A stretch of DNA of 64,000 bases, taken from positions 5,766,001 to 5,830,000 of the forward strand of contig NW_025964372.1 in NCBI RefSeq assembly GCF_023055435.1. Reading direction: 5' to 3'. The DNA is from Haliotis rufescens (lineage: Eukaryota). Shown here one piece after another: positions 1 through 12,145 of this stretch; the first letter of the stretch is position 1; each line of letters opens with the position of its first letter. A program made the translations under genes and the position numbers. Below the pieces are notes generated by a model. That model saw nothing but the letters and a program-made list of their open reading frames with translations, did not search any database and was not told the origin of the DNA.

Positions 1-200
1 CTAGGCTTCACACAATATTCCCCATCTAAAACACAGGCATAGGATATACATCTAGGCATGTATACTGCATACTCGACTTGTGTTTCTTTTGCGTGTGAGT
101 ATACATCTAGGCTTCACCCAATGATACCCATCTGACACACAAGCATAGGATATACATCTAGGCTTTACCTAATATTACCCAACTGAAATACAAGCATGCC
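1..200. repeat. Degenerate ~51-bp tandem repeat (ctaggcttcac...gcataggatatacat), intronic
   Basis: The ctaggc unit start recurs at about 1, 52, 107 and 158. Confidence 0.7.
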
Positions 201-208
201 ATGGTTAC

Positions 209-3200
209 CTTGCCGACGATGCTGGATATATTGATGATAGATCCATTCTCCACCTTGCCCTCCATCATACATTTGCCGACTGCCTGGTTCACCAGGAACG
301 TGCCCTGGCAAGGGGAGAAATACTGCATCACAACCTGTTCCCAGGGACAATCCAGGGAGGCTACAGGGGGAGGGGTGGCAAAACATGACAGCTACAGGGG
401 GTGGGGTGGGTGGGTGTGTTTAACCTGACAGCTACAGGGGGAGGGGTGGGAAACATGACAGCTACAGGGGGTGGGGTGGGTGGGGTGGGTGGGTGTGTTT
501 AACTTGACAGCTACAGGGGGAGGGGTGGGTGGGTGTGTTTAACCTGACAGCTACAGGGGGAGGGGTGGGAAACATGACAGCTACAAGGGTGGGGTGGGTG
601 GGTGTGTTTAACTTGACAGCTACAGGGGGAGGGGTGGGTGGGTGTGTTTAACCTGACAGCTACAGGGGGTGGGGTGGGAAACATGACCGCTACAGGGGGA
701 GGGGTGGGTGGGTGTGTTTAACCTGACAGCTACAGGGGGAGGGGTGGGTGGGTGTGTTTAACCTCAATGCTACAGGGGGAGGGGTGGGTGGGTGTGTTTA
801 ACCTGACAGCTACAGGGGGAGGGATGGGTGGGTGTGTTTAACATGACAGCTACAGGGGGAGGGGTGGGTGGGTGTGTTTAACTTGACAGCTACAGGGGGA
901 GGGGTGGGTGGGTGTGTTTAACATGACAGCTACAGGGGGAGGGGTGGGTGGGTGTGTTTAACCTGACAGCTACAGGGGGAGGGGTGGGTGGGTGTGTTTA
1001 ACCTGACAGCTACAGGGGGTGGGGTGGGAAACATGACAGCTACAGGGGGAGGGGTGGGTGGGTGTGTTTAACCTGACAGCTACAGGGGGTGGGGTGGGTG
1101 GGTGTGTTTAACCTGACAGCTACAGGGGGAGGGGTGGGTGGGTGTGTTTAACCTGACAGCTACAGGGGGTGGGGTGGGAAACATGACAGCTCCAGGGAGA
1201 GGGGTGGGTGGGTGTGTTTAACCTGACAGCTACAGGGGGAGGGGTGGGTGGGTGTGTTTAACCTGACAGCTACAGGGGGTGGGGTGGGAAACATGACCGC
1301 TACAGGGGGAGGGGTGGGTGGGTGTGTTTAACCTGACAGCTACAGGGGGAGGGGTGGGTGTGTGTGTTTAACCTGACAGCTACAGGGGGAGGGGTGGGTG
1401 GGTGTGTTTAACCTGACAGCTACAGGGGGTGGGGTGGGAAACATGACAGCTACAGGGGGAGGGGTGGGTGGGTGTGTTTAACCTGACAGCTACAGGGGGA
1501 GGGGTGGGTGGGTGTGTTTAACCTGACAGCTACAGGGGTCGGGGTGGGAAACATGACAGCTACAGGGGGAGGGGTGGGTGGGTGTGTTTAACCTGACAGC
1601 TACAGGGGGTGGGGTGGGTGGGTGTGTTTAACCTGACAGCTACAGGGGGAGGGGTGGGTGGGTGTGTTTAACCTGACAGCTACAGGGGGAGGGGTGGGTG
1701 TGTGTGTTTAACCTGACAGCTACAGGGGGAGGGGTGGGTGTGTGTGTTTAACCTGACAGCTACAGGGGGAGGGGTGGGTGGGTGTGTTTAACCTGACAGC
1801 TACAGGGGGTGGGGTGGGAAACATGACCGCTACAGGGGGAGGGGTGGGTGGGTGTGTTTAACCTGACAGCTACAGGGGGAGGGGTGGGTGTGTGTGTTTA
1901 ACCTGACAGCTACAGGGGGAGGGGTGGGTGGGTGTGTTTAACCTGACAGCTACAGGGGGTGGGGTGGGAAACATGACAGCTACAGGGGGAGGGGTGGGTG
2001 GGTGTGTTTTACCTGACAGCTACAGGGGGAGGGGTGGGTGGGTGTGTTTAACCTGACAGCTACAGGGGTCGGGGTGGGAAACATGACAGCTACAGGGGGA
2101 GGGGTGGGTGGGTGTGTTTAACCTGACAGCTACAGGGGGTGGGGTGGGTGGGTGTGTTTAACCTGACAGCTACAGGGGGAGGGGTGGGTGGGTGTGTTTA
2201 ACCTGACAGCTACAGGGGGAGGGGTGGGTGTGTGTGTTTAACCTGACAGCTACAGGGGGAGGGGTGGGTGTGTGTGTTTAACCTGACAGCTACAGGGGGA
2301 GGGGTGGGTGGGTGTGTTTAACCTGACAGCTACAGGGGGTGGGGTGGGAAACATGACCGCTACAGGGGGAGGGGTGGGTGGGTGTGTTTAACCTGACAGC
2401 TACAGGGGGTGGGGTGGGAAACATGACAGCTACAGGGAGAGGGATGGGTGGGTGTGTTTAACATGACAGTTACAGGGAGGGGGTGGGTGGGTCGGTGGGT
2501 GGGTGGGTGGGTTTAACATGACAGCTACAGGGGGAGGGTTGGGTGGGTGGGTTTAACATGACAGCTGCAGGGGGAGGAGTGGGTGGGTGAGTTTATGACA
2601 GCTACAGGGAGAGGAGTGGGTGGGTGAGTTTAACATGACAGCTACAAGGGGAGGGGTGGGAAACATGACAGCTGCAGGGGGAGGGGTGGGTGGGCGTTAA
2701 CACAACCTGACGACCTGATCCATGCGGGTGACAATAATTGTAATTGTTTAACAGATGGCATACCTAACACATCAATGACTAAGTATTTCATTCGTACTTC
2801 TATTCACAAATGCAAATTTGTCAGTTTTAGCATTGTGTCATTAAAATCACTTCTCAAAATGAAAGATTTCTTAATTTTTCACTCATCATATTTCAGAATC
2901 ATTTTGGGATTTTTATATGAATATAATAATATTTCGAATAAAATCACATCCACAAACCTTCAAATTGACATCAATGACCTTGTCGAAATTTTTCTCATCC
3001 ATTTTCATGAGGAAGTTGTCTCGTGTTATTCCTGCAGAGTTTACAGCCACAGATGGCAGCACCGAAAATTGGCTTTTAATTTGTGCCATCATGGCGTTAA
3101 TATCGGTGGAGGAGGCGATGTCGGCTGTGTATGCCTGGTGCTTCTGGCCTGGCGGAGATAGAAACATTACAGAATTATAAATTGCTTTTGTAGACAATCA

Positions 3201-4951
3201 AATGCCACAGAATCACTTGCAGATTTGGGTGTTTTACAGATGGGTGTTTGTTGCTGATAGAATGTTTTACTGATAAGGTGTCATTCTGACAAAATGTTTT
3301 AATGATAAGGTGTCATTCTGACAAAATGTTTTACTGATAAGGTGTCATTCTGACAAAATGTTTTACTGATAAGGTGTCATTCTAACAAAATGTTTTACTG
3401 ATGAGCATTTATTACCAATGGCTGAAAACCAAAACTAAAATTTCAAATTTCAAATACTTGGACCATCAGGCTAGAATACTTACTGCCTTGTGGGAGTCCT
3501 GACACTGTTGCCTCAGCATTGGACTTGTCGATGTCCACCACTGCGAGTATAGCGCCCTCTCGGGCAAACACCTGACATATTGTTTTACCTATGCCACTGC
3601 CTCCTCCTGTAACCATGGTAACAAAGAAACATCTGACTAAATTTGATGTTACAACCCTATATTGATTTAGAAAACTGAAACAGTTGAATTTTTGACAGAT
3701 GGAAATTGATGTAACCCATAGCAACCAGAGAACATTATAGTACAAAAGGAGAAACTATATTATAAGAGTCATTTCTGTTGCATGCTGCTAGGGTTGTTCT
3801 CGACCACGGTGCTTTCAATTAGGAGATCAACATGCTGTGTTTTCAATGTAGAGCTATTTTACCTGTAGATTTAACCCCGCTAAATTGAATTTGAAACCAA
3901 ACACCCAGCGTGAGGTTTCAAATGTTTAATTTAGCATAGTTAAATCTACAGGTAACCTAGCTCTACATTGAAAACACAGTATGTTTTTCTCCATTCTACC
4001 ATGACTAAACATAACGCGAACTCTTTGGTGTTAGCAAATATATAGAGTGGAGCGGGATTGGTTGAGTCCAGTATTTTGAGTGGGTTATCAATCTGAATTA
4101 CGGAATCACCAACAACAGCCTGTAAACAAAATATGGCGCTGTATATGCTCAAGCAGTTTGTCTACACTGTAATACTTCTCCCGAACATATCACAGGCATT
4201 GAAAGCATATAAGCACGGTAACTTGGTCAGCTAGCATGAGGTGGGCATCCCTAAAGAAAACAAAGCAAGCATTGCAAGGCTTTCGTTCTACACCGAACGT
4301 CACCATTATGACATCATATCACTCATTGTCACGCAAAAGATTGACAAGTTTGTTTTTTGCAAGACAGAAGAAAACTATCATAAAACATGTCCTTCACTCA
4401 GATCCTGTGAAAAACTAGAGTGGTAAAATGCAAAACTTACACCGTAGTACATTTAACATTGCCTGATGTAAATGTATGTAAGGTCGAAAGATATAATGAG
4501 TGTACCCTGGTCAAGAACTACCCATCACTATCACTTCCTGTTTTTTGTAGTTTTTTTACACTGAAATAAGTTTTCAAAGTGCTCAGTGACATTTAACTGT
4601 TTTGGGTTTCAAGTTTGCAACACAGTTTGATAACATTATCTTGACGGAAAGACCTGAAATCCGACGCTACTTGACAATGAGTGTCATTCCCAATTCGATC
4701 GAATCAGGTTGAGGTCAATGACAGCCAATGTCATTTGACACGACATACAGGTGACACCCATTGCCGACAACACAGCACAAGTTTTCACCGACAAATAGAC
4801 AATAATGTTGGAAGTTTACATCGCTAATAATGCATAATATTTAATAGGTATGAGGTAAACAAGTTTAGAATAAATATATAACTGAAATGTCCTAAAATTT
4901 CAAGATACCCGTCACGATAGCTAATCTTCCTGCAAGTACTCCCGACGCCAT
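209..4951 (-). CDS. HSD17B8: (3R)-3-hydroxyacyl-CoA dehydrogenase / 17-beta-HSD8 (KE6, mitochondrial SDR); 5' four exons, gene continues past the left edge
   Basis: Exons 4951-4909, 3606-3484, 3148-2958, 304-209, all GT-AG and phase-consistent. Translation MASGVLAGRLAIVTGGGSGIG...[42 protein letters not shown]...GSIINISSIVGK has the SDR TGxxxGIG motif and the HSD17B8/FabG-type [15 protein letters not shown] and SIINISSIVGK motifs. Confidence 0.9.
356..2695 (+). repeat. G-rich minisatellite with 40-bp and 30-bp units in HSD17B8 intron 3
   Basis: Units acctgacagctacagggggaggggtgggtgggtgtgttta and acctgacagctacagggggtggggtgggaa. A 530-bp higher-order period is visible from variant acatgaccgc at 1291, 1821 and 2351. 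Confidence 0.97.
3263..3402. repeat. ~32-bp tandem repeat (tgttttactgataaggtgtcattctgacaaaa), about 4 copies
   Basis: Direct repeats visible in HSD17B8 intron 2. Confidence 0.9.
3837..3978. mobile_element. Small inverted-repeat element (MITE-like hairpin)
   Basis: Arms of about 39 bp, gtgttttcaatgtagagctattttacctgtagatttaac and gttaaatctacaggtaacctagctctacattgaaaacac, around a ~65-bp spacer. Confidence 0.6.
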
Positions 4952-5148
4952 GCTGCTTGTTATTTATAGCCACAGGAAGTTCACGTACGCAACTTATTTT
5001 TAGATTTGGGGATTTCGATCTTTTCTATTTCTATAATAATATTGACCAATCAGGAAACGTGTTACAGATAAAGAATCCCGTGCGGTCCTATAAGAATTTC
5101 TGTTGCATTAGTGTTTGGTCATGAATTGCACATGGTGATCGTTTCATC
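4952..5148. promoter_or_regulatory. Bidirectional promoter between HSD17B8 and the PTRH1-like gene
   Basis: Divergent ATGs separated by only 197 bp. ETS-type CAGGAAGT at 4973-4980 and CCAAT box (gaccaatcag) at 5046-5050. Confidence 0.75.
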
Positions 5149-8100
5149 ATGAGTTTTACAGTTGTTCTGAATTCTTGTGTTGCTGGCGTTCTCAAATCCT
5201 TCACAGTTGATGCCCGTATTTTAACGAAGAGATCATGCATCCGAAAAAGTCTTAACAAGGTTGTAACCGCTAGATTCTGCACCAGTATCGGTTATCCGCA
5301 GTTGACATCCAGAGATGACGATTCCGAATCCGACTCGGAGAATGAAGTTGGAGAGACAAGATCGCTCACAAATAAATTTTTGGTAACTCTTTCTTTTGAA
5401 GTATTCTCAATTACAACAATGTATAGATGTATAAACCACGGAAAGTGTGTCTGGAGCAGTTCACTATGGGCACGACTGAGCAGACACGTGTGCACCGGTA
5501 CTCTCAGGCTAGCCAGACGATCTCATGAATGACATTGACAAACATGCTTCAATGTCGGTATAATGTCGTATTTTTATGCTTGTATTTCTGTCTTCACGTC
5601 AGTTCTTGTTTAGTGAAATACAAAATATCAACACTGTAACACACAATATTCTGTAGATGATCTGAACAGTTGGCTTTGCTACAAAAGGCCAGGAAACTGA
5701 AGGTCAAAGTTCAAAATTCTGAATTCATTTATAAGAAATAAATATAGATCTAATCACAGATTTTGTAAAACTTGTGTTTATAGAACTTGCATCTGTTTAA
5801 TCAGAAATTGGCCCTGTTCGCATTCCAAGCTAGAATACATATTCTGAACATCTGCTTGTAAACTGTAAGTTACATATGCTAAATGGATCAGGTGGCCATA
5901 TGTTTGGTGACCATGGCAACTGGATGATTGCATGTTATTTTACGCTGATTGTAGGATATCAATCACTCGTTTGTCTGGTCCTGAATTTGGCCCGTAATGA
6001 TTGCTTGAATAACCTGTTATGGTCTGATTAGAACTGCAAACAGTTGTTGTGCAAACTGATAGTTGTTATCAAAATGTTATATTTGTATTAATAATCGGAG
6101 CACCTTTAGAATACAGTACCACAACTTCTCGTGAGGACGATCTCTGCCGTAGGTCACATGTCACAAGACAAGCAAACAGTTTTAGTGAGAATCCGTCGGA
6201 CGCGAACCCGCGACCTTCGGATTGTTAGCCTGACAGCTAACCGACTGAGCTACGTCCACACTGTTAAACTTAGTGCAAATTTACCTAGTCATTCCTATGA
6301 TGTTACGGAACTGAACGAAAGGGTCGAATAGGTGACGAACACTTACGAAAGTTAGGGGTAGGCATGGTGTCTCGTGACTTTAGTCTACGGACACTTACGA
6401 ATGATCCCGATGCCATTTGGCACACTCGTCCCATTCCGTAATCTACAAGATACTGGGTGGTGATCAGGAATGAGCCGATATGCCGCGGACTGAAAACGGC
6501 TCCAGGCGTCAGACGTCAGACGTCGAACTCGCGAGTGCGCATGAATGATATGGTATTTAATAATTCGTCGGGTGATTTTTGTGACAGAAAAGTGTGGTGG
6601 GGAACACTGTAAGGATGATTTGGATAATAGTAAGGAACGATGGAGGAATAAGCATGACTAGTGACGACACAACGGTGAGTTCGCTTTTGAATCTGTACTG
6701 AAAAATGTAGCCGGTGAAAGTGGCTTGTGTGAATGTTCCAGGACAGTTTCCAGTAGCCAAAATATTCGACACAAAACCATTTCATCCTTTTTACTCGACG
6801 TTTTTGTGGGAAGAATATAAGGAGTCGCTATATAATCTATAATAGCCACTAAACGAGTACCTCGGCCCCTAACCCTAATGATCGTAAAGGGGTGATTGAT
6901 CGTAAAGAGGTTAAGGGTTAATGATCACGTGTTTGAAAAGTTTGTGGTACTGTATTCTAAAGGTAGGCCTAATAATCATGTGCCATTATGTTTGGGTACA
7001 GTTTATTTTAATATTTTCTCAATGTTATGTATTCACTATTAAATATGTAAAAAATACACTGTTTACATTATTATGTTTGCACACATCTTTCATCATGTTC
7101 ATATGTGTCAATCTCATTCAAATAAATCCATGGAAGACAGGAAATACTGCAATGAATGTCATTCAGGATATACTGTGGCATGACATTCAAATTCAGCTTG
7201 GACAGTTGTACCTTACACTGTAGATGTATTAATTATTTTGATATCATGAAATGGTTAATCGACACGAAACAGTTTCATCATGTTCAGTTAGGCAAGTAAA
7301 CAGTTTAAGATTGTTCAAACTGTGACATCCCTATCCAGAATGATTATTTACCGGCTGCCATCACGATCTCTAGCCCATTTTTATTTTGTGCTGTCAACTC
7401 ATTCTTTCTTCTTTTAAATGTGCCTCAACTAGTTTTAAATCTAATCTGTTATATGCTAGTTATCGTACTGTCCTTCGATGACAGGTTTTTATAAAGTTTA
7501 AATATATGTATTATAAATGTCTATCTTCTCGTCACGATATCGCTGAAATATTAACTCACTCACACACAGTACTGGACCACAATTATGTTTCTAGGTTTGT
7601 CAGCACCATACACGTGCTCTTTGGTTTCACCGAAGTGGTAAACGTCTAAGACCTGCATAACTTCGGGCTTTCCTCCCACATTAAGCTGACACAACGTGAT
7701 ATAACTGGAATACTGTTAAAAGCAGCGTTAAACACAACTCACTCACTCAAAGGACTGGAATATTGCTGAATGTGGCATCAAACAACAAACAAACAAATTG
7801 TTGTTTGGAAATCTGCTCATTGAATCAATCTTGAAGGTCTTGCGATTAAGTCTTGATCCATCTGTATGATCTTCCCGATTCAAGGGTCCAGGGTGGAAAC
7901 TGAACTTTTATAGTCAGTTAATGTCCTTGGATCGGGAAGATGGTCTTGATCAAAAGACCATTTGCCACTGTATCATTGTTTTCAGATTGTAGGTCTCGGC
8001 AACCCAGAGATGCAGTCAAGTCGCTACAGTGTGGGGATGCAGTTTGTGGACCTTCTGGCCAAAAGGATGCGACTGAGGTGGACCGCACACATGTTCAACA

Positions 8101-11100
8101 AGACGGGTGGATTCACTGCGTCGGCGCACATCGGCAACTACACCGAGTTACACCTTCTCAAACCACGGTTGCCTGTGAATATCAACGGGGCAAGCGTCAT
8201 CAAATCAAGTGAGTTCACGACTACAGAAGACTCAAGTTACCGTGGTTACTAGTGCATAGGTTGATATGTTTTGCTATGGATTCTTTCTAGCCAGGAGGTT
8301 AGGTTGTTATGTAAGTTTTTGCTGCCGTCCATTGTTTGTGGGACCGCCTCCGTGGTCTAATGGTAGAGCGGAATATTTGGGGTTCAATCCCCGACCGCGT
8401 CATACCCAAAGACGTTAAAAGATGGTACTTGTTGTTACCCTGTCTGGCACTCAGCATTAACAGGCTAAAACAGGGACTGGTCGGCTCGGAGTCAGTATAC
8501 TGTGTCTGAGTGGGGTATTCATGTTAAACTGCGGCATGGTATCTTAGTGAGCTAGCACTATAAATCGGCATCAGTCCGGACTAGTACAAGCAGCCACACA
8601 CACATGCATGCACATCGCTACATAAGTGCAATAATCTTGGATGCGACGTTAAACCCCATTTCACCTGACATTGTTCGTGGTCCTGTCATACATCGGAAAG
8701 TGAGTTTTGTTGGAAATCATCAATTGATTCTGTAACCATGTTAATAGCCATTAAAAAATTAAGATTTGAGACCTCAGGCTGATCATGCTGTTGGTTTCAA
8801 ATGAAGTTTTTGGTCATTGAATATTCCATTTTCTTTCAACTCGACCCATACAAGATCGCGTCAGGTAGCGTGTATAATTAAGTAATCAGTGTCAAGACTT
8901 CTAAATTCTCAGAACAAATGAGCAAAGTGTTTGGATTAGCATATTTGATTTCTGTGCCTTGAAAAAATCTAGAACATCCATTTCCTAATGTAGATATTTA
9001 AGGCCCTGACATTATTTTGTTATTGTGGATATTATTTACTCCCGGCCATTTCTGAGCGCCATGGCCCCTCCATCCATCAAGGAATGTTTGTACTATGTTT
9101 GATCTCTGGCACACGAATGTGAGGACTTCTGTGCTAGGTTAGTGATAACGAGGATGGAGACGTCGACATCACTCCCAAATGAACCTATGGTCCAGGGAAT
9201 ATTTGGCATCAGAGATTGGAAATTAGCGCCATTCTCCTGAAGCAAGGGAGTTAACTGACCATAAAAGTCCTGTTCCCACTCTTGCCGAACTAGGCTGGAA
9301 TTATGGAGTTATGCTTTATCTGGACGCATAGTCTACGCATAGTCCAATCAAAATTGTGTAGCGAAATCGACATTCAGTTTGTAAACTGACGTGCAGATTG
9401 TGGTTGATTCAGGATTTGCAAAGTATGTTTACCGACAGATATTTTCCAAATCTTGTCATGTTTTTAATCAAGGAATGCACATGTTTTGATGCACTTCGTG
9501 AAGTAGAACCCATTTTATTAGAATATAGATCTTCATTATCGATCAGATCCTCTTCACTGGGCGATGCACATTTTATATTAAGAAAATGCAAGTGATATGA
9601 GAGGTGGGATCTGATTGGTCAAAAGGAATGACTTAGGAGGGTGTTAACTTGGAATAGCCACTGGTTGCGCTACGATCAAGTCCAGGAATTCCAGCCTAGT
9701 TCGTCAAGGGTGGAAACTGGACTTTTACAGTCAGTTAACTCCCTTGCCTCAGGAAGATGTTAAACACTTGCTGATGTGTGTATGATCAACTTTCACAGTG
9801 TAGGAACTATTTGTTCTTCCAGCTCGTTTCTTTGATGTGAAAGCGGGGAATGTGTATTTGGTACACGCACTGCCTGATTTAGCCCAAGGGGAGTTCGAAA
9901 TCTCCAAAGTGGACAGCACCAGGTAAGAGAGCGGTCAGTTGGAGGGAGATGGTCAATACAATCATATAACACAAGGGTCAGGAGGCACTTTGCACAATTT
10001 GATGACTAGTATTATTTGTCAGTAATTTTGAAGAGCCANNNNNNNNNNNNNNNNNNNNNNNNNNNNNNNNNNNNNNNNNNNNNNNNNNNNNNNNNNNNNN
10101 NNNNNNNNNNNNNNNNNNNNNNNNNNNNNNNNNNNNNNNNNNNNNNNNNNNNNNNNNNNNNNNNNNNNNNTTCCTCAACATGCTCAACAAGTCTGTGTGT
10201 TTACAGACCCGTGAAGACCTGGGGTAAAATAGGTCTTCAGCAACCCATGCTTGCCATAAAGGGCGACTATGCTTGTCGTAAGAGGTGACTAACGAGATCG
10301 GGTGGTCAGGCTCGCTGACTTGGTTGATGCACGTCATAGTATCCCAATTGCGTGGATTGATGCTCATCATGTCAATCACTGGGTTGTCTGGCCCAGACTC
10401 ATTTATTTACAGACAGCTGTCATATACCCCGGTAGCTGGAATATTGCTGAGTGCATCATTAAACAACAAACAAACAAACAAAACATCTGGAAGACAGCAT
10501 GTCGCAATTCAAGCACAACCTTGTGAGGTTCCACAGTTGAATGTTTAGATGGCAGACTGGGATATAACTGAAATACTGTACAAAGGGGAGGTAACTCACT
10601 CATACCTTGGTCCCACGGTTCGTCAGGAGAAAGGCTGGTTGAGTCAGTGGTTGGTATAGTGGAATGTGTTGATGTTTCAGCTACAGTGGTGTGGCGTCCA
10701 CGGTGGAGACCCTCAATTCAGATGTAAGTATTGTAATGAAGTTTTTTAAATCAGGAATTATTTTGCTCATGTAACACATGTGTCAGGATGTTAAAAAAAT
10801 AATAGATAGTGATAATCATTCGGGCAGGCTATCGATATAGATTATAGAGATCGATAATCGCTTACTAAATATCAATCAGTTATTGATAAATATCGGCGAA
10901 GTAACTTTAAGTAAAAAAATATGCAGATATAACAAAAACAGTTGCTTTCCGTCTTTGACAATTGACATATCAACAAAAACATGACTGTCTTGGTAATTCT
11001 CCAATTGATTTCATCACAATAGTTTATGTAAGTTTTGTAGTGCAGGGGAGATAACTACATCAGAGAAAAATCCCTTCTATGTTTCGGCTGTTTTGTCAAT

Positions 11101-12145
11101 CAATTTTGAAGGGAAACATAATTAATTAAGGAATTTCTGTGTAGATTTTAGTTCAAATGATACAAATAATAACGAACCTAGTTGTACTTATTATTACGGA
11201 ACACAGAAAAGAAATGGCAATACATATTGTTTGAAAAGCCGGTATCCATGGTAGTCCTAGAGGAGGTGCAACATGAAATCACCTCACTCACTCTGTCCTT
11301 TATTTACCGCCTCCGTGGCCTAGTGGTAGAGTGTCCGCCTGGAGAGCGGAAGGTCCAGGGTTAGATCCCGACCGCGTCATAACAAAAGACTTTAAAAGAT
11401 GGTACTTCTTGTTACCCTGTCTGGCGCTTGGTATTAAGGGGCTAAAACAAGAACTGGTCGGCTCGAGGTCAGTATACTGTGTCTGAGTGGGGTATTCATG
11501 TTAAACTGCGGCATGGTATCTCATTGTGCTGGCACTATAAATCGGCATCAGTCCGGACTAGTACAAGCAGCCACACACACACACGTACATGCACGTCGCT
11601 ATATAAGTGCAATAATCTTGGACGCGACGTTAAACCCCATTTCACCTCACCTCACCTGTCCTTTATTTGTTTTTGTTTTTGTTTTTTCATGGTAATCTTC
11701 CCCTTGTGTTGTGTTTCAGGAAATGACGAGTCTTGCTATCGGAATAGACGGTCCAGCAGAAGATGAGGAACCGGATGACTATGTGTGGGATGATTTCACA
11801 AATGATGAATATGGCAACATTGACAATGCCATCAAGGATGCCATGGAAACGCTGATAACACACATTGAAGAGAAACATGACATTGAGCTGGACATTAGGG
11901 TATCTCGGCCCTTGCATGTCAAAGACGAAGGCCTTTCCAAATACATGACAAAAATGAAGAAACTGTCCAAGACGAAATATTCCAAGGATTATCGGAGAGG
12001 TCATCGGAATGAGAGAGATTCTCGGTATGAGAGAGATTCCCGGAATGAGAGATATTCTTGGAATGAGAGAGATTCTCGGAATGAGAGAGATTCTTGGAAT
12101 GAGAAAGATTCTTGGAATGAGAAAGATTCTCGAAGATACTATTAA
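5149..12145 (+). CDS. PTRH1: Peptidyl-tRNA hydrolase (Pth1/PTRH1)-family protein, 341 aa, predicted mitochondrial, catalytic residues substituted
   Basis: Exons 5149-5382, 7986-8208, 9823-9922, 10681-10723, 11720-12145, all GT-AG and in frame. Translation NKFL|IVGLGNPEMQSSRYSVGMQFVDLLAKR...LLKPRLPVNINGASV...VYLVHALPDL...SYSGVASTVETLNSD|EMTSLAIGIDGP...YVWDDF is colinear with the Pth fold motifs LIVGLGNP, RHNxG, LLxP-xMN, VHDELD, GHNG and RLRIGIGxP. Symbol assigned from family and position next to CFAP157; could be a paralog. Confidence 0.85.
6185..6259 (-). pseudogene. Degenerate tRNA-like sequence (tRNA-Ile-like SINE head or pseudo-tRNA)
   Basis: Minus strand reads gtagctcagtcggttag...gctaacaa...aaggtcgcgggttcgcgtcc with A/B-box-like segments, but the acceptor stem does not pair. 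Confidence 0.5.
7583..7748 (+). mobile_element. SINE family D, 5'-truncated
   Basis: Matches the 3' half of the copy at 14662-14940 (ttatgtttctaggtttgtcagcacc...actcactca). Confidence 0.8.
8343..8666 (+). mobile_element. tRNA-derived SINE family B (MetaSINE-like central domain)
   Basis: tRNA-like head, then gtcatacccaaagacgttaaaagatggtacttgttgttaccctg core. Flanked by an imperfect TSD, cattgtt(t/c)gtgg. Several near-identical copies in the window. Confidence 0.85.
9230..9759 (-). mobile_element. MITE family E (~70-bp TIRs), diverged copy
   Basis: TIR catc..cc.gagcaagggagttaactgac and its reverse complement. Internal sequence matches the copies at 32037 and 38310. Confidence 0.85.
10039..10170. 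other. Assembly gap (132 N) in PTRH1-like intron 3
   Basis: Run of N bases. Confidence 1.
10206..10482 (+). mobile_element. Retroposon family A (no tRNA head, GACCCGTGAAG start, (AAAC)n tail)
   Basis: Near-identical to more than 12 other copies in the window. Confidence 0.9.
11307..11655 (+). mobile_element. SINE family B (MetaSINE-like), full length
   Basis: tRNA head, (cacct)n tail and a 13-bp TSD, ctgtcctttattt. Confidence 0.9.
12005..12133 (+). repeat. Coding 18-bp tandem repeat giving (R/W)(N/Y)E(R/K)(D/Y)S x7
   Basis: cggaatgagagagattct-type units in frame in the last PTRH1-like exon. Confidence 0.9.

What the first reader, a model, noticed from the sequence alone, without database searches (positions are those of the whole stretch)
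5149..12145. Intact Pth/PTRH1-family gene that has lost its catalytic site: candidate mitochondrial pseudo-enzyme
Seen: five exons with canonical splice sites give an unbroken 341-aa protein colinear with the Pth fold. By-eye alignment to E. coli Pth and human PTRH1 shows RH(N/S)xG changed to RYSVG (general base H20 to Y), VHDELD to VHALPD (D93 to A), and the GGS/HxxGHNG loop to VDSTSYSG (H113 to Y, N114 to S, glycine loop lost). N10 (GLGNP), N68 (PVNING) and the hydrophobic core are kept. The basic tRNA-contacting segments appear replaced by neutral or acidic residues (GEFEISK for GxxRLK, TSLAIGIDGPAEDEEPDDYVWDDF for RLRIGIGRP). Established: H20, D93 and N114 are required for Pth activity, and maize CRS2 shows that a Pth fold can be repurposed as an organellar RNA-splicing factor. 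Inference: this protein is conserved for a non-hydrolytic role such as a scaffold in mitoribosome assembly or rescue, or RNA processing. I do not know of a described animal example.
Basis: partly seen in the sequence, partly recalled or inferred. Interest (0 to 1): 0.85.

Follow-up and report, generated by a model that had tools for sequence, protein, structure and literature searches.

The report
Abalone's catalytically dead peptidyl-tRNA hydrolase
Abalone's only bacterial-type peptidyl-tRNA hydrolase gene is intact, spliced and expressed, but it has lost the residues that do the chemistry and hold the tRNA, so it is most likely a conserved "dead enzyme" with a new, unknown job.

Summary
Five GT..AG exons (5149-5382, 7986-8208, 9823-9922, 10681-10723, 11720-12145) give an open 341-aa reading frame. 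The N gap (10039-10170) lies inside intron 3. Spliced transcript contigs from three coded abalone species join the exons as modelled, so no exon hidden in the gap is used.

The organism is a Haliotis species. The H. asinina orthologue (P0001, 82% identical) carries the same losses: H20 to Y, D93 to A, E94 to L, N114 to S, K105 and R131 to S, R133 to A. In 39 other animal and bacterial Pth1 proteins, H20 and D93 never vary.

The Pth core has changed from basic (typical net charge +6) to acidic (-12). The predicted fold is still Pth. Three whole-genome searches find no second Pth1-type gene, while three PTH2-family loci exist.

Replacements between the two abalone proteins are more conservative than random mutation would give (p about 0.0005). 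Among close species, the listed exon differences are 5 synonymous and 2 not.

Verdict: probably a selected, lineage-specific pseudo-hydrolase, a new variant of a known kind, with plant CRS2 as the only described parallel. The mitochondrial location and the RNA role are untested, and the acidic core argues against tRNA-like RNA binding by the fold.

The parts
5125..5148 (+). Minimal 5' UTR, holding a 6-codon upstream ORF (5132-5152) whose TGA overlaps the main ATG
   Evidence: Spliced contigs of X5 and X10 carry 257 nt before exon 2, which is 234 nt of exon 1 plus about 24 nt (table 8). The uORF was read from the sequence. Exon 1 itself was not in the stretch laid.
5149..5382 (+). Exon 1 (aa 1-78): basic N-terminal extension (aa 1-52: 8 K/R, 1 D/E), then an acidic Ser/Asp/Glu stretch (aa 53-75)
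   Evidence: ATG and GT donor. 76% identical to residues 1-80 of H. asinina P0001. Composition.
7986..8208 (+). Exon 2 (aa 79-153): N-terminal half of the Pth fold. GLGN (N10) and NING (N68) are kept. The catalytic His20 codon is TAC, Tyr92, at 8025-8027
   Evidence: PF01195 at 32.5 bits. Laid in spliced contigs of X1, X5 and X10. Alignments.
9823..9922 (+). Exon 3 (aa 153-186): HALPD in place of HDELD (Asp93 to Ala168 at 9867-9869, Glu94 to Leu). The K103/K105 positions are Glu178/Ser180
   Evidence: The 8208|9823 joint is seen in contigs of X1 and X5 (table 8). Alignment.
10039..10170 (.). Assembly gap (N) inside intron 3; not coding in the observed transcripts
   Evidence: Transcript contigs leave only 46 nt between exon 3 (up to 9919) and exon 5.
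10681..10723 (+). Exon 4 (aa 186-200): degenerate GHNG loop, with Tyr187 (10682-10684) for His113 and Ser188 for Asn114
   Evidence: AG acceptor and GT donor. Its 43 nt fit the 46-nt segment in the contigs. 11 of 15 residues are identical in P0001.
11720..12145 (+). Exon 5 (aa 201-341 plus stop): SLAIGID for RLRIGIG (R131 to Ser204, R133 to Ala206), an acidic patch, the C-terminal helix of the fold, a basic linker (aa 253-292, 90% conserved) and a repeat tail
   Evidence: Laid in contigs of X1, X5, X9 and X10. PF01195 at 15.9 bits. 78% identical to P0001 residues 200-346. Region identities.
12004..12132 (+). In-frame 18-nt tandem repeat, 7.2 copies, coding (R/W)NERDS hexapeptides in the C-terminal tail
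   Evidence: Tandem Repeats Finder. H. asinina has a six-residue longer, Trp-richer version.

Best explanation
This is the abalone (Haliotis) orthologue of animal PTRH1, the bacterial-type peptidyl-tRNA hydrolase, and the only Pth1-type gene in the genome. On the stem leading to Haliotis it lost five things: the His-Asp pair that activates the attacking water, the Glu that reads adenine-76, the Asn of the oxyanion hole, the glycine-rich loop, and the Lys/Arg residues that clamp the tRNA. Its core surface changed from basic to strongly acidic. The protein still has the Pth fold, is transcribed and correctly spliced, and has been kept open and conservatively evolving since H. asinina split from the window's species. 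I therefore read it as a pseudo-enzyme that no longer cleaves or holds peptidyl-tRNA and is kept for a binding role. My inference is that the acidic Pth-fold body, which still has N10, N68 and the peptide groove, binds a basic protein or peptide partner. The newly gained parts would give partner contacts or regulation: the Ser/Asp/Glu stretch after the N-terminal extension, the conserved basic linker, and the Trp/Arg/Asp hexapeptide tail. Real peptidyl-tRNA recycling would be left to the PTH2-family genes. Shown: gene structure, expression, loss of residues, single copy, fold, charge flip, and signs of constraint. Inferred: loss of activity, the binding role, and any location in the cell.
For: Gene model and splice sites. 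Spliced contigs in three coded species, with the exact exon lengths: table 8. No intronless copy exists in the genome that could mimic them. Family: PF01195 on exon 2, PF01195 precomputed on orthologue P0001, and Pth structures as best sequence matches in the PDB. Fold: the AlphaFold model of P0001 has pLDDT above 90 over about residues 75-255, and Foldseek gives TM 0.86-0.90 to solved Pth structures. Residue loss: 10 of the 35 columns conserved at 80% or more are changed in both abalone proteins, and these sit on catalytic and substrate positions. His and Asp are invariant in the 39 others. PMC11994314 states that these residues are strictly conserved and describes the Asp-His-water mechanism and the acidic adenine pocket. 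Charge: core net -12 and pI 4.7-4.8, against a median of about +6 and pI above 9. Single copy: PF01195, chiton P0005 and limpet P0002 each find only this locus in the 1.33-Gb genome. No canonical Haliotis protein appears among the 120 best relatives of limpet PTRH1. Back-up enzymes: three PF01981 loci. Constraint: the 61 replacements against P0001 have a mean BLOSUM62 of +0.25, against -0.39 for simulated random nonsynonymous changes (0.05% of simulations reach it; core alone 0.7%). The core is 86% identical, against 77% and 69% for the N-extension and tail. Among close species, 5 of the 7 listed exon differences are synonymous. Differences tend to fall in columns that vary in the family (p = 0.06). 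Tree: the abalone pair sits inside the animal clade on a stem of 1.29 changes per site, with tips of 0.06-0.07, where the median tip is 0.62.
Against: No enzyme assay was done. Tyr and Ser could in principle support some other chemistry. The structure model was built on an alignment of canonical homologues, so it would show the family fold in any case. 82% identity between two congeners is low for a housekeeping protein, so constraint is partly relaxed. No partner, location or phenotype is known. Absence of a second copy rests on exon-wise six-frame searches of one assembly that contains gaps.
Confidence: 0.62

Rival explanations
1. The gene is drifting towards loss. Pth1 activity became dispensable because PTH2-type enzymes suffice, the catalytic site decayed, and the still-open, still-transcribed frame has no function of its own.
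For: Pth1 is dispensable in yeast (abstract of PMC4929431) and has been lost in some eukaryote lineages (PMC6514570). Three PTH2-family loci are present. The stem branch is long. Identity between congeners is only 82%, and the tail varies in length.
Against: The frame is open over 341 and 346 codons in two species, and every length difference is in frame within the repeat tail. About 3.6% of random point changes would give a stop. Replacements are significantly conservative. The core and the basic linker are better conserved than the flanks. Nine of the ten changed conserved positions carry the same new residue in both species. Splicing is exact in three species.
Confidence: 0.17
2. It is still an enzyme. 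It would have a rebuilt active site, for example Tyr92/Ser188 with the retained Asn residues, acting on peptidyl-tRNA or on another ester substrate.
For: N10, R19 and N68 and the groove-forming strands are kept. The Asn114 position is known to tolerate other residues, such as Arg in Thermus (PMC11994314). H. asinina keeps His at the 113 position.
Against: His20 and Asp93 are invariant in all 39 compared proteins and are described as strictly conserved catalytic residues. The adenine-pocket Glu and the tRNA clamp residues are lost as well, and the surface is acidic, so the natural substrate should be repelled. The window's species and H. asinina differ at the 113 position (Tyr against His), which is not what a new catalytic residue would show.
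Confidence: 0.08
3. This is the reader's version: a mitochondrial RNA-handling factor in the manner of plant CRS2, working in mitoribosome assembly or rescue or in RNA processing. RNA would be held by the basic linker and tail rather than by the Pth core.
For: CRS2 shows that a Pth fold without activity can serve organellar RNA splicing (PMC9275481), and CRS2 structures are among the fold matches. The first 52 residues have 8 K/R and 1 D/E. The linker at residues 253-292 has pI 9.8 and is 90% conserved. Eukaryotic Pth broadly tracks the presence of mitochondria (PMC6514570).
Against: No targeting predictor was available, and human Ptrh1 also acts on cytosolic 60S complexes (PMC6514570 citing Kuroha 2018). 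The core's net charge of -12 is the opposite of an RNA-binding surface. CRS2 is no closer in sequence than bacterial Pth (37.5 against 52 bits). No partner or RNA target is known.
Confidence: 0.13

Closest known systems
Animal PTRH1 / bacterial Pth1 (PF01195), e.g. Patella vulgata XP_050413482 (P0002), Liolophura sinensis (P0005), E. coli Pth (2PTH)
   Same: It has the same fold and family signature and is collinear over the whole domain. It sits inside the animal PTRH1 clade, has an N-terminal extension as in other molluscs, and is single-copy.
   Different: The catalytic His and Asp, the adenine-pocket Glu, the oxyanion Asn, the Gly-rich loop and the Lys/Arg clamp are all replaced. The core is acidic (-12 against about +6). 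It has an added acidic Ser/Asp/Glu stretch and a Trp/Arg/Asp hexapeptide repeat tail. The stem branch is about twice the median tip length.
Maize/rice CRS2, the chloroplast group II intron splicing factor derived from Pth (PDB 1RYB, 1RYN)
   Same: It is a Pth-fold protein that has given up hydrolase activity through a few substitutions and is kept for another job (PMC9275481). CRS2 is a structural match to the model.
   Different: The origin is independent (plant against abalone), and CRS2 is no closer in sequence than bacterial Pth. CRS2 works with CAF1 and CAF2 on organellar group II introns, which is a role I did not test here and for which I have no abalone evidence. The abalone protein has an acidic core and new tails.
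Dom34/Pelota, as a parallel only: the inactive paralogue of release factor eRF1
   Same: It is a translation-rescue hydrolase fold that lost its catalytic residue and was kept as a binding factor (PMC6514570).
   Different: The fold is unrelated. Dom34 is an ancient paralogue that exists beside an active copy, whereas here the only Pth1-type copy itself is the inactive one.

Membership tests
Pth1 / Pept_tRNA_hydro (PF01195), as a fold family | Sequence match above Pfam's gathering score | tested here: met
   Exon 2 alone scores 32.5 bits against a cut-off of 27, and 31.6 bits in the genome search. Orthologue P0001 carries PF01195.
Pth1 / Pept_tRNA_hydro (PF01195), as a fold family | Pth alpha/beta fold | tested here: met
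   Tested on orthologue P0001, not on the window's joined protein. pLDDT is above 90 over about residues 75-255. Foldseek gives TM 0.86-0.90 and E about 1e-17 to solved Pth structures. The model leans on an alignment of canonical relatives.
Active peptidyl-tRNA hydrolase (Pth1 enzyme) | Catalytic His20 (E. coli numbering) | tested here: not met
   Tyr92 (TAC, 8025-8027) in the window and in P0001. His is present in all 39 other proteins.
Active peptidyl-tRNA hydrolase (Pth1 enzyme) | Asp93, which polarises the His, and the acidic adenine-76 pocket (D93, E94, D96) | tested here: not met
   HALPD: Asp to Ala168 and Glu to Leu169, with only the last Asp kept. Roles of these residues are from PMC11994314.
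Active peptidyl-tRNA hydrolase (Pth1 enzyme) | Asn10 and Asn68 | tested here: met
   GLGN and NING are kept in both abalone proteins.
Active peptidyl-tRNA hydrolase (Pth1 enzyme) | G-rich loop with His113 and Asn114 (or a basic residue) at the oxyanion position | tested here: not met
   The window has STSYSG and H. asinina has FESHSG. Asn is replaced by Ser in both, and the Gly residues by Asp and Ser.
Active peptidyl-tRNA hydrolase (Pth1 enzyme) | Basic clamp for the tRNA acceptor end (K103/K105, R131/R133) and a basic surface | tested here: not met
   The residues are Glu178/Ser180 and Ser204/Ala206. Core net charge is -12, the lowest of 39 proteins. The E. coli numbers come from my own knowledge of the family and from motif equivalence.
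Active peptidyl-tRNA hydrolase (Pth1 enzyme) | Hydrolysis of peptidyl-tRNA; rescue of pth(ts) | not testable with these tools
   This needs a bench assay.
Animal PTRH1 orthologue group | Placement inside the animal clade, and the only such gene in the genome | tested here: met
   The animal clade has 99% SH-aLRT support and the abalone pair lies inside it, with its position among molluscs unresolved. Only one locus was found by three genome searches. Synteny was not tested.
CRS2-type splicing factors | Specific kinship with CRS2; CAF (CRM-domain) partners; organellar group II intron targets | tested here: not met
   Only kinship was tested. CRS2 scores 37.5 bits against 52 for mycobacterial Pth, so CRS2 is a parallel, not kin. 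Partners and targets were not tested.

The most novel reading that the evidence does not exclude
Abalone turned their single bacterial-type peptidyl-tRNA hydrolase into an acidic, non-catalytic Pth-fold adaptor with a new Trp/Arg/Asp repeat tail. It has been kept by selection across the genus. This would be the first animal Pth1 pseudo-enzyme and an independent repeat of what plants did with CRS2, possibly acting in translation quality control or organelle gene expression by binding proteins rather than tRNA.
Probability: 0.5. Interest if true: 0.6.

Novelty: new variant of a known kind. Interest (0 to 1): 0.5.

Why it matters
Pth1 is a textbook housekeeping enzyme and an antibiotic target, and its catalytic His and Asp are treated as invariant. 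An animal genus whose only Pth1-type gene is intact, expressed and conserved, yet lacks both those residues and the tRNA-binding surface, matters in three ways.

- It shows that animals can dispense with Pth1 chemistry.
- It offers a natural "dead" Pth fold with which to ask what else the fold can do. CRS2 in plants is the only described precedent.
- It warns that automatic names such as "probable peptidyl-tRNA hydrolase" mislabel it.

The case is confined to one lineage and its new function is unknown, so the interest is moderate.

Tried and rejected
1. Second Pth-like site. The PF01195 genome search gave a 16.9-bit match (E = 3) at G000:C16:55166-55291, an open frame with a GRHNG motif. tblastn of six Pth proteins and the model over C16:35200-75099 found no other Pth exon. 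The match sits next to a SINE and runs unbroken across what are separate exons 4 and 5 in the real gene. I rejected it as chance.

2. The look-up of encoding contigs for the H. asinina gene was closed, so I obtained no H. asinina DNA, no true dN/dS and no synteny.

3. Protein atlas search with the C-terminal 93 residues of P0001 gave no usable hit.

4. Cluster look-ups to find other vetigastropods among the near hits returned only unnamed transcriptome fragments, all with RH. The loss can therefore be dated only to after the split from limpets and other molluscs and before the H. asinina split.

5. Paper searches for an inactive animal PTRH1 or a Pth pseudo-enzyme found nothing relevant. Jenkins and Barkan 2001 (PMC145411) is not held.

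6. ARAGORN found no tRNA genes in the introns.

7. Earlier notes of the scan held nothing on this gene.

8. The joined 341-aa protein has no reference, so I sent it to no search, family, structure or homology tool. Exons were searched one by one by reference. The joined frame was built only inside scripts from /data/window.fa, and orthologue P0001 stood in for the fold and PDB searches.

9. Complex prediction was not used because there is no candidate partner.
Full report
**What is there**

The exons are:

| Exon | Coordinates (+ strand) |
|---|---|
| 1 | 5149-5382 |
| 2 | 7986-8208 |
| 3 | 9823-9922 |
| 4 | 10681-10723 |
| 5 | 11720-12145 |

All four introns begin GT and end in a pyrimidine-rich tract plus AG. 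Searched exon by exon by reference, exon 2 alone passes Pfam's cut-off for Pept_tRNA_hydro (PF01195, 32.5 bits against 27). Exon 5 matches the end of the same model weakly (15.9 bits).

The joined protein has no reference, so I sent it to no search, family, homology or structure tool. It was built and aligned only inside scripts from the window file.

**The gap**

The N run at 10039-10170 lies inside intron 3 (9923-10680).

Laying the contigs of four runs on 7900-12010 (table 8) gave long spliced contigs:

- X1 (1895 nt) and X5 (2101 nt) cover 7985-8208, continue directly at 9823-9919, and resume at 11720 after exactly 46 contig letters. That equals the last 3 nt of exon 3 plus the 43-nt exon 4.
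- X10 (1825 nt) covers exon 2 and exon 5 with 143 letters between them, which is 100 + 43.

So the transcripts of three coded species use the modelled exons, and nothing from the gap.

The runs are only guessed to be RNA. However, the own-genome search with the orthologue finds the exons only at this locus and finds no intronless copy, so intron-free contigs must come from mRNA. The X5 and X10 contigs carry 257 nt before exon 2, which fits exon 1 plus about 24 nt of leader. It is 76% identical to residues 1-80 of the orthologue.

**Whose gene it is**

A HMMER pass of exon 2 over 1.8 billion representative proteins gave one close hit, P0001 (346 aa, 93% identical over the exon). It also gave 51 distant hits at 38-49% identity. 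P0001 is NCBI's "probable peptidyl-tRNA hydrolase [Haliotis asinina]", so the window comes from another abalone species.

The distant hits with names are ordinary PTRH1 proteins. They come from:

- a limpet;
- a chiton;
- bivalves;
- octopus;
- a pond snail;
- echinoderms;
- an acorn worm.

**The losses**

In a 41-row alignment, 35 columns are conserved at 80% or more among the 39 non-abalone proteins. Both abalone proteins differ at 10 of them, with the same residue at nine of the ten. The E. coli numbering below comes from my knowledge of the family and from motif equivalence.

| E. coli position | Window residue | Note |
|---|---|---|
| His20 | Tyr92 | His invariant in the 39 others |
| Met67 | Val142 | |
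| Asp93 | Ala168 | Asp invariant in the 39 others |
| Lys105 | Ser180 | |
| Two Gly of the loop | Asp183, Ser186 | |
| His113 | Tyr187 | H. asinina keeps His |
| Asn114 | Ser188 | |
| Arg131 | Ser204 | |
| conserved Leu of the YVL motif | Trp223 | |

In addition, Glu94 is Leu169, Lys103 is Glu178 and Arg133 is Ala206. GLGN (Asn10), Arg19, NING (Asn68) and the core glycines, prolines and hydrophobic residues are kept.

PMC11994314 describes the mechanism: Asp holds the protonated His, which takes a proton from the attacking water. It calls His, Asn68 and Asp "strictly conserved", describes the acidic D-E-x-D pocket that holds adenine-76, and notes that the Asn114 position can be Arg in Thermus. 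So the Asn114 change alone would not be telling, but the His, Asp and Glu changes are.

None of the other hits in which the motif could be read has lost the His. PDB sequence alignments show the same equivalences.

**Charge**

Over the aligned core (window residues 76-252), the abalone proteins have net charge -12 and pI 4.7-4.8. These are the lowest of 39 proteins, whose median is about +6 with pI above 9.

The other segments are:

- a basic N-terminal 52 residues (8 K/R, 1 D/E);
- an acidic Ser/Asp/Glu stretch (residues 53-75);
- a basic linker (residues 253-292, pI 9.8);
- a tail coded by an in-frame 18-nt repeat of 7.2 copies (12004-12132), giving (R/W)NERDS units.

**Fold**

An AlphaFold model of P0001, built with a 41-sequence alignment, has pLDDT above 90 over about residues 75-255. 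Both ends are disordered. Foldseek matches solved Pth structures at E about 1e-17 with target TM 0.86-0.90, and CRS2 (1RYB) is also among the hits. The alignment consists of canonical relatives, so this shows that the sequence is compatible with the fold, not that the fold is proven.

**Only copy**

Three searches of the 1.33-Gb assembly each find only this locus: the Pfam model, the chiton protein and the limpet protein.

A 16.9-bit match on contig C16 has no companion exons within 40 kb, and I take it as chance. The 120 best relatives of limpet PTRH1 include no canonical abalone protein.

Three PTH2-family loci exist in the genome, so other peptidyl-tRNA hydrolases are available.

**Descent**

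In a maximum-likelihood tree of 39 proteins (quick search, SH-aLRT only), the abalone pair lies inside the animal clade, which has 99% support. Its stem is 1.29 changes per site and its tips are 0.06-0.07. The median tip in the tree is 0.62. Its exact position among molluscs is unresolved. This pattern fits one orthologue that changed fast once and slowly since.

**Is it still under selection?**

The indirect evidence is:

- The frame is open in both species, and the only length difference is an in-frame six-residue block plus one terminal residue in the repeat tail.
- Identity is 86% in the core and 90% in the basic linker, against 77% in the N-extension and 69% in the tail.
- The 61 replacements have a mean BLOSUM62 of +0.25. 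Simulated random nonsynonymous changes of this coding sequence give -0.39 ± 0.21, and 0.05% of simulations reach the observed value. For the core alone the figure is 0.7%.
- Replacements tend to fall in columns that vary in the family (p = 0.06).
- Among the near-identical species in the runs, the seven exon differences listed are five synonymous and two not (R105K, A241S). Three further differences counted in table 8 were not listed.

Together these favour continued, somewhat relaxed, purifying selection.

**Reading**

The most likely account is a lineage-specific pseudo-hydrolase. It would be the PTRH1 orthologue with both chemistry and tRNA grip removed, kept for a binding role. I put this at about 0.6.

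That the partner is a protein or peptide rather than RNA is my inference from the acidic core and the retained peptide groove. The Trp-bearing repeat tail and the Ser/Asp/Glu stretch look like gained interaction or regulatory modules, but nothing tests this.

The rivals are:

| Rival | Confidence |
|---|---|
| Slow decay without function | about 0.17 |
| Rebuilt enzyme | about 0.08 |

The basic N-terminus is compatible with an organellar presequence. However, no predictor was available, and mammalian Ptrh1 is also reported to act on cytosolic 60S complexes (PMC6514570).

**Compared with what is known**

It belongs to the Pth1 fold family and to the animal PTRH1 orthologue group, but it fails the tests for an active Pth1.

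[quoted passage not shown] CRS2 is a parallel, not kin: it scores lower against P0001 than bacterial Pth does.

Paper searches found no inactive animal PTRH1. The gene itself is already annotated in H. asinina under an enzyme name.

I rate it a new variant of a known kind, with moderate interest.

Noticed in passing
window 161-4951 (- strand): A short-chain dehydrogenase gene (PF00106 on three exon ORFs) lies head to head with the Pth-like gene. Its first coding exon starts at 4951, only 197 bp from the ATG at 5149, which suggests a shared bidirectional promoter.
   Followed up: partly
window 5132-5152 (+): A six-codon upstream ORF lies in the implied 5' leader. Its TGA overlaps the main start codon (ATGA), an arrangement that can couple termination to re-initiation.
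   Followed up: no
window 8390-8669 and 11367-11650 (+): Two same-sense copies of one SINE-like element (92% alike) sit in introns 2 and 4. Contig depth over them in the RNA-like runs is thousands of times that of the exons, so the family is very abundant in transcripts.
   Followed up: partly
window 9230-9759: A MITE-like element with 73-nt inverted ends (88% complementary, 384 nt between them) ends about 60 bp before exon 3.
   Followed up: no
P0021 / P0073 (Octopus sinensis, O. vulgaris PTRH1): Octopus PTRH1 has GLGH for GLGN (Asn10 position) and GHSG for GHNG (Asn114 position), and a near-neutral core (net -3), while keeping His20. This is a milder drift of the same enzyme in another mollusc lineage.
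   Followed up: no
G000:C1:13910435-13912380, C1:78565082-78565602, C124:12805669-12809060: Three separate PTH2-family (PF01981) loci are in the genome, presumably PTRH2, PTRHD1 and one more. One match holds a TGA inside it.
   Followed up: no
G000:C16:55166-55291 (L002 1468-1677): An isolated open frame with GRHNG and IGVG motifs next to a SINE scores 16.9 bits on PF01195. No other Pth exons lie within 40 kb. I take it as chance, but a relic fragment is not excluded.
   Followed up: yes
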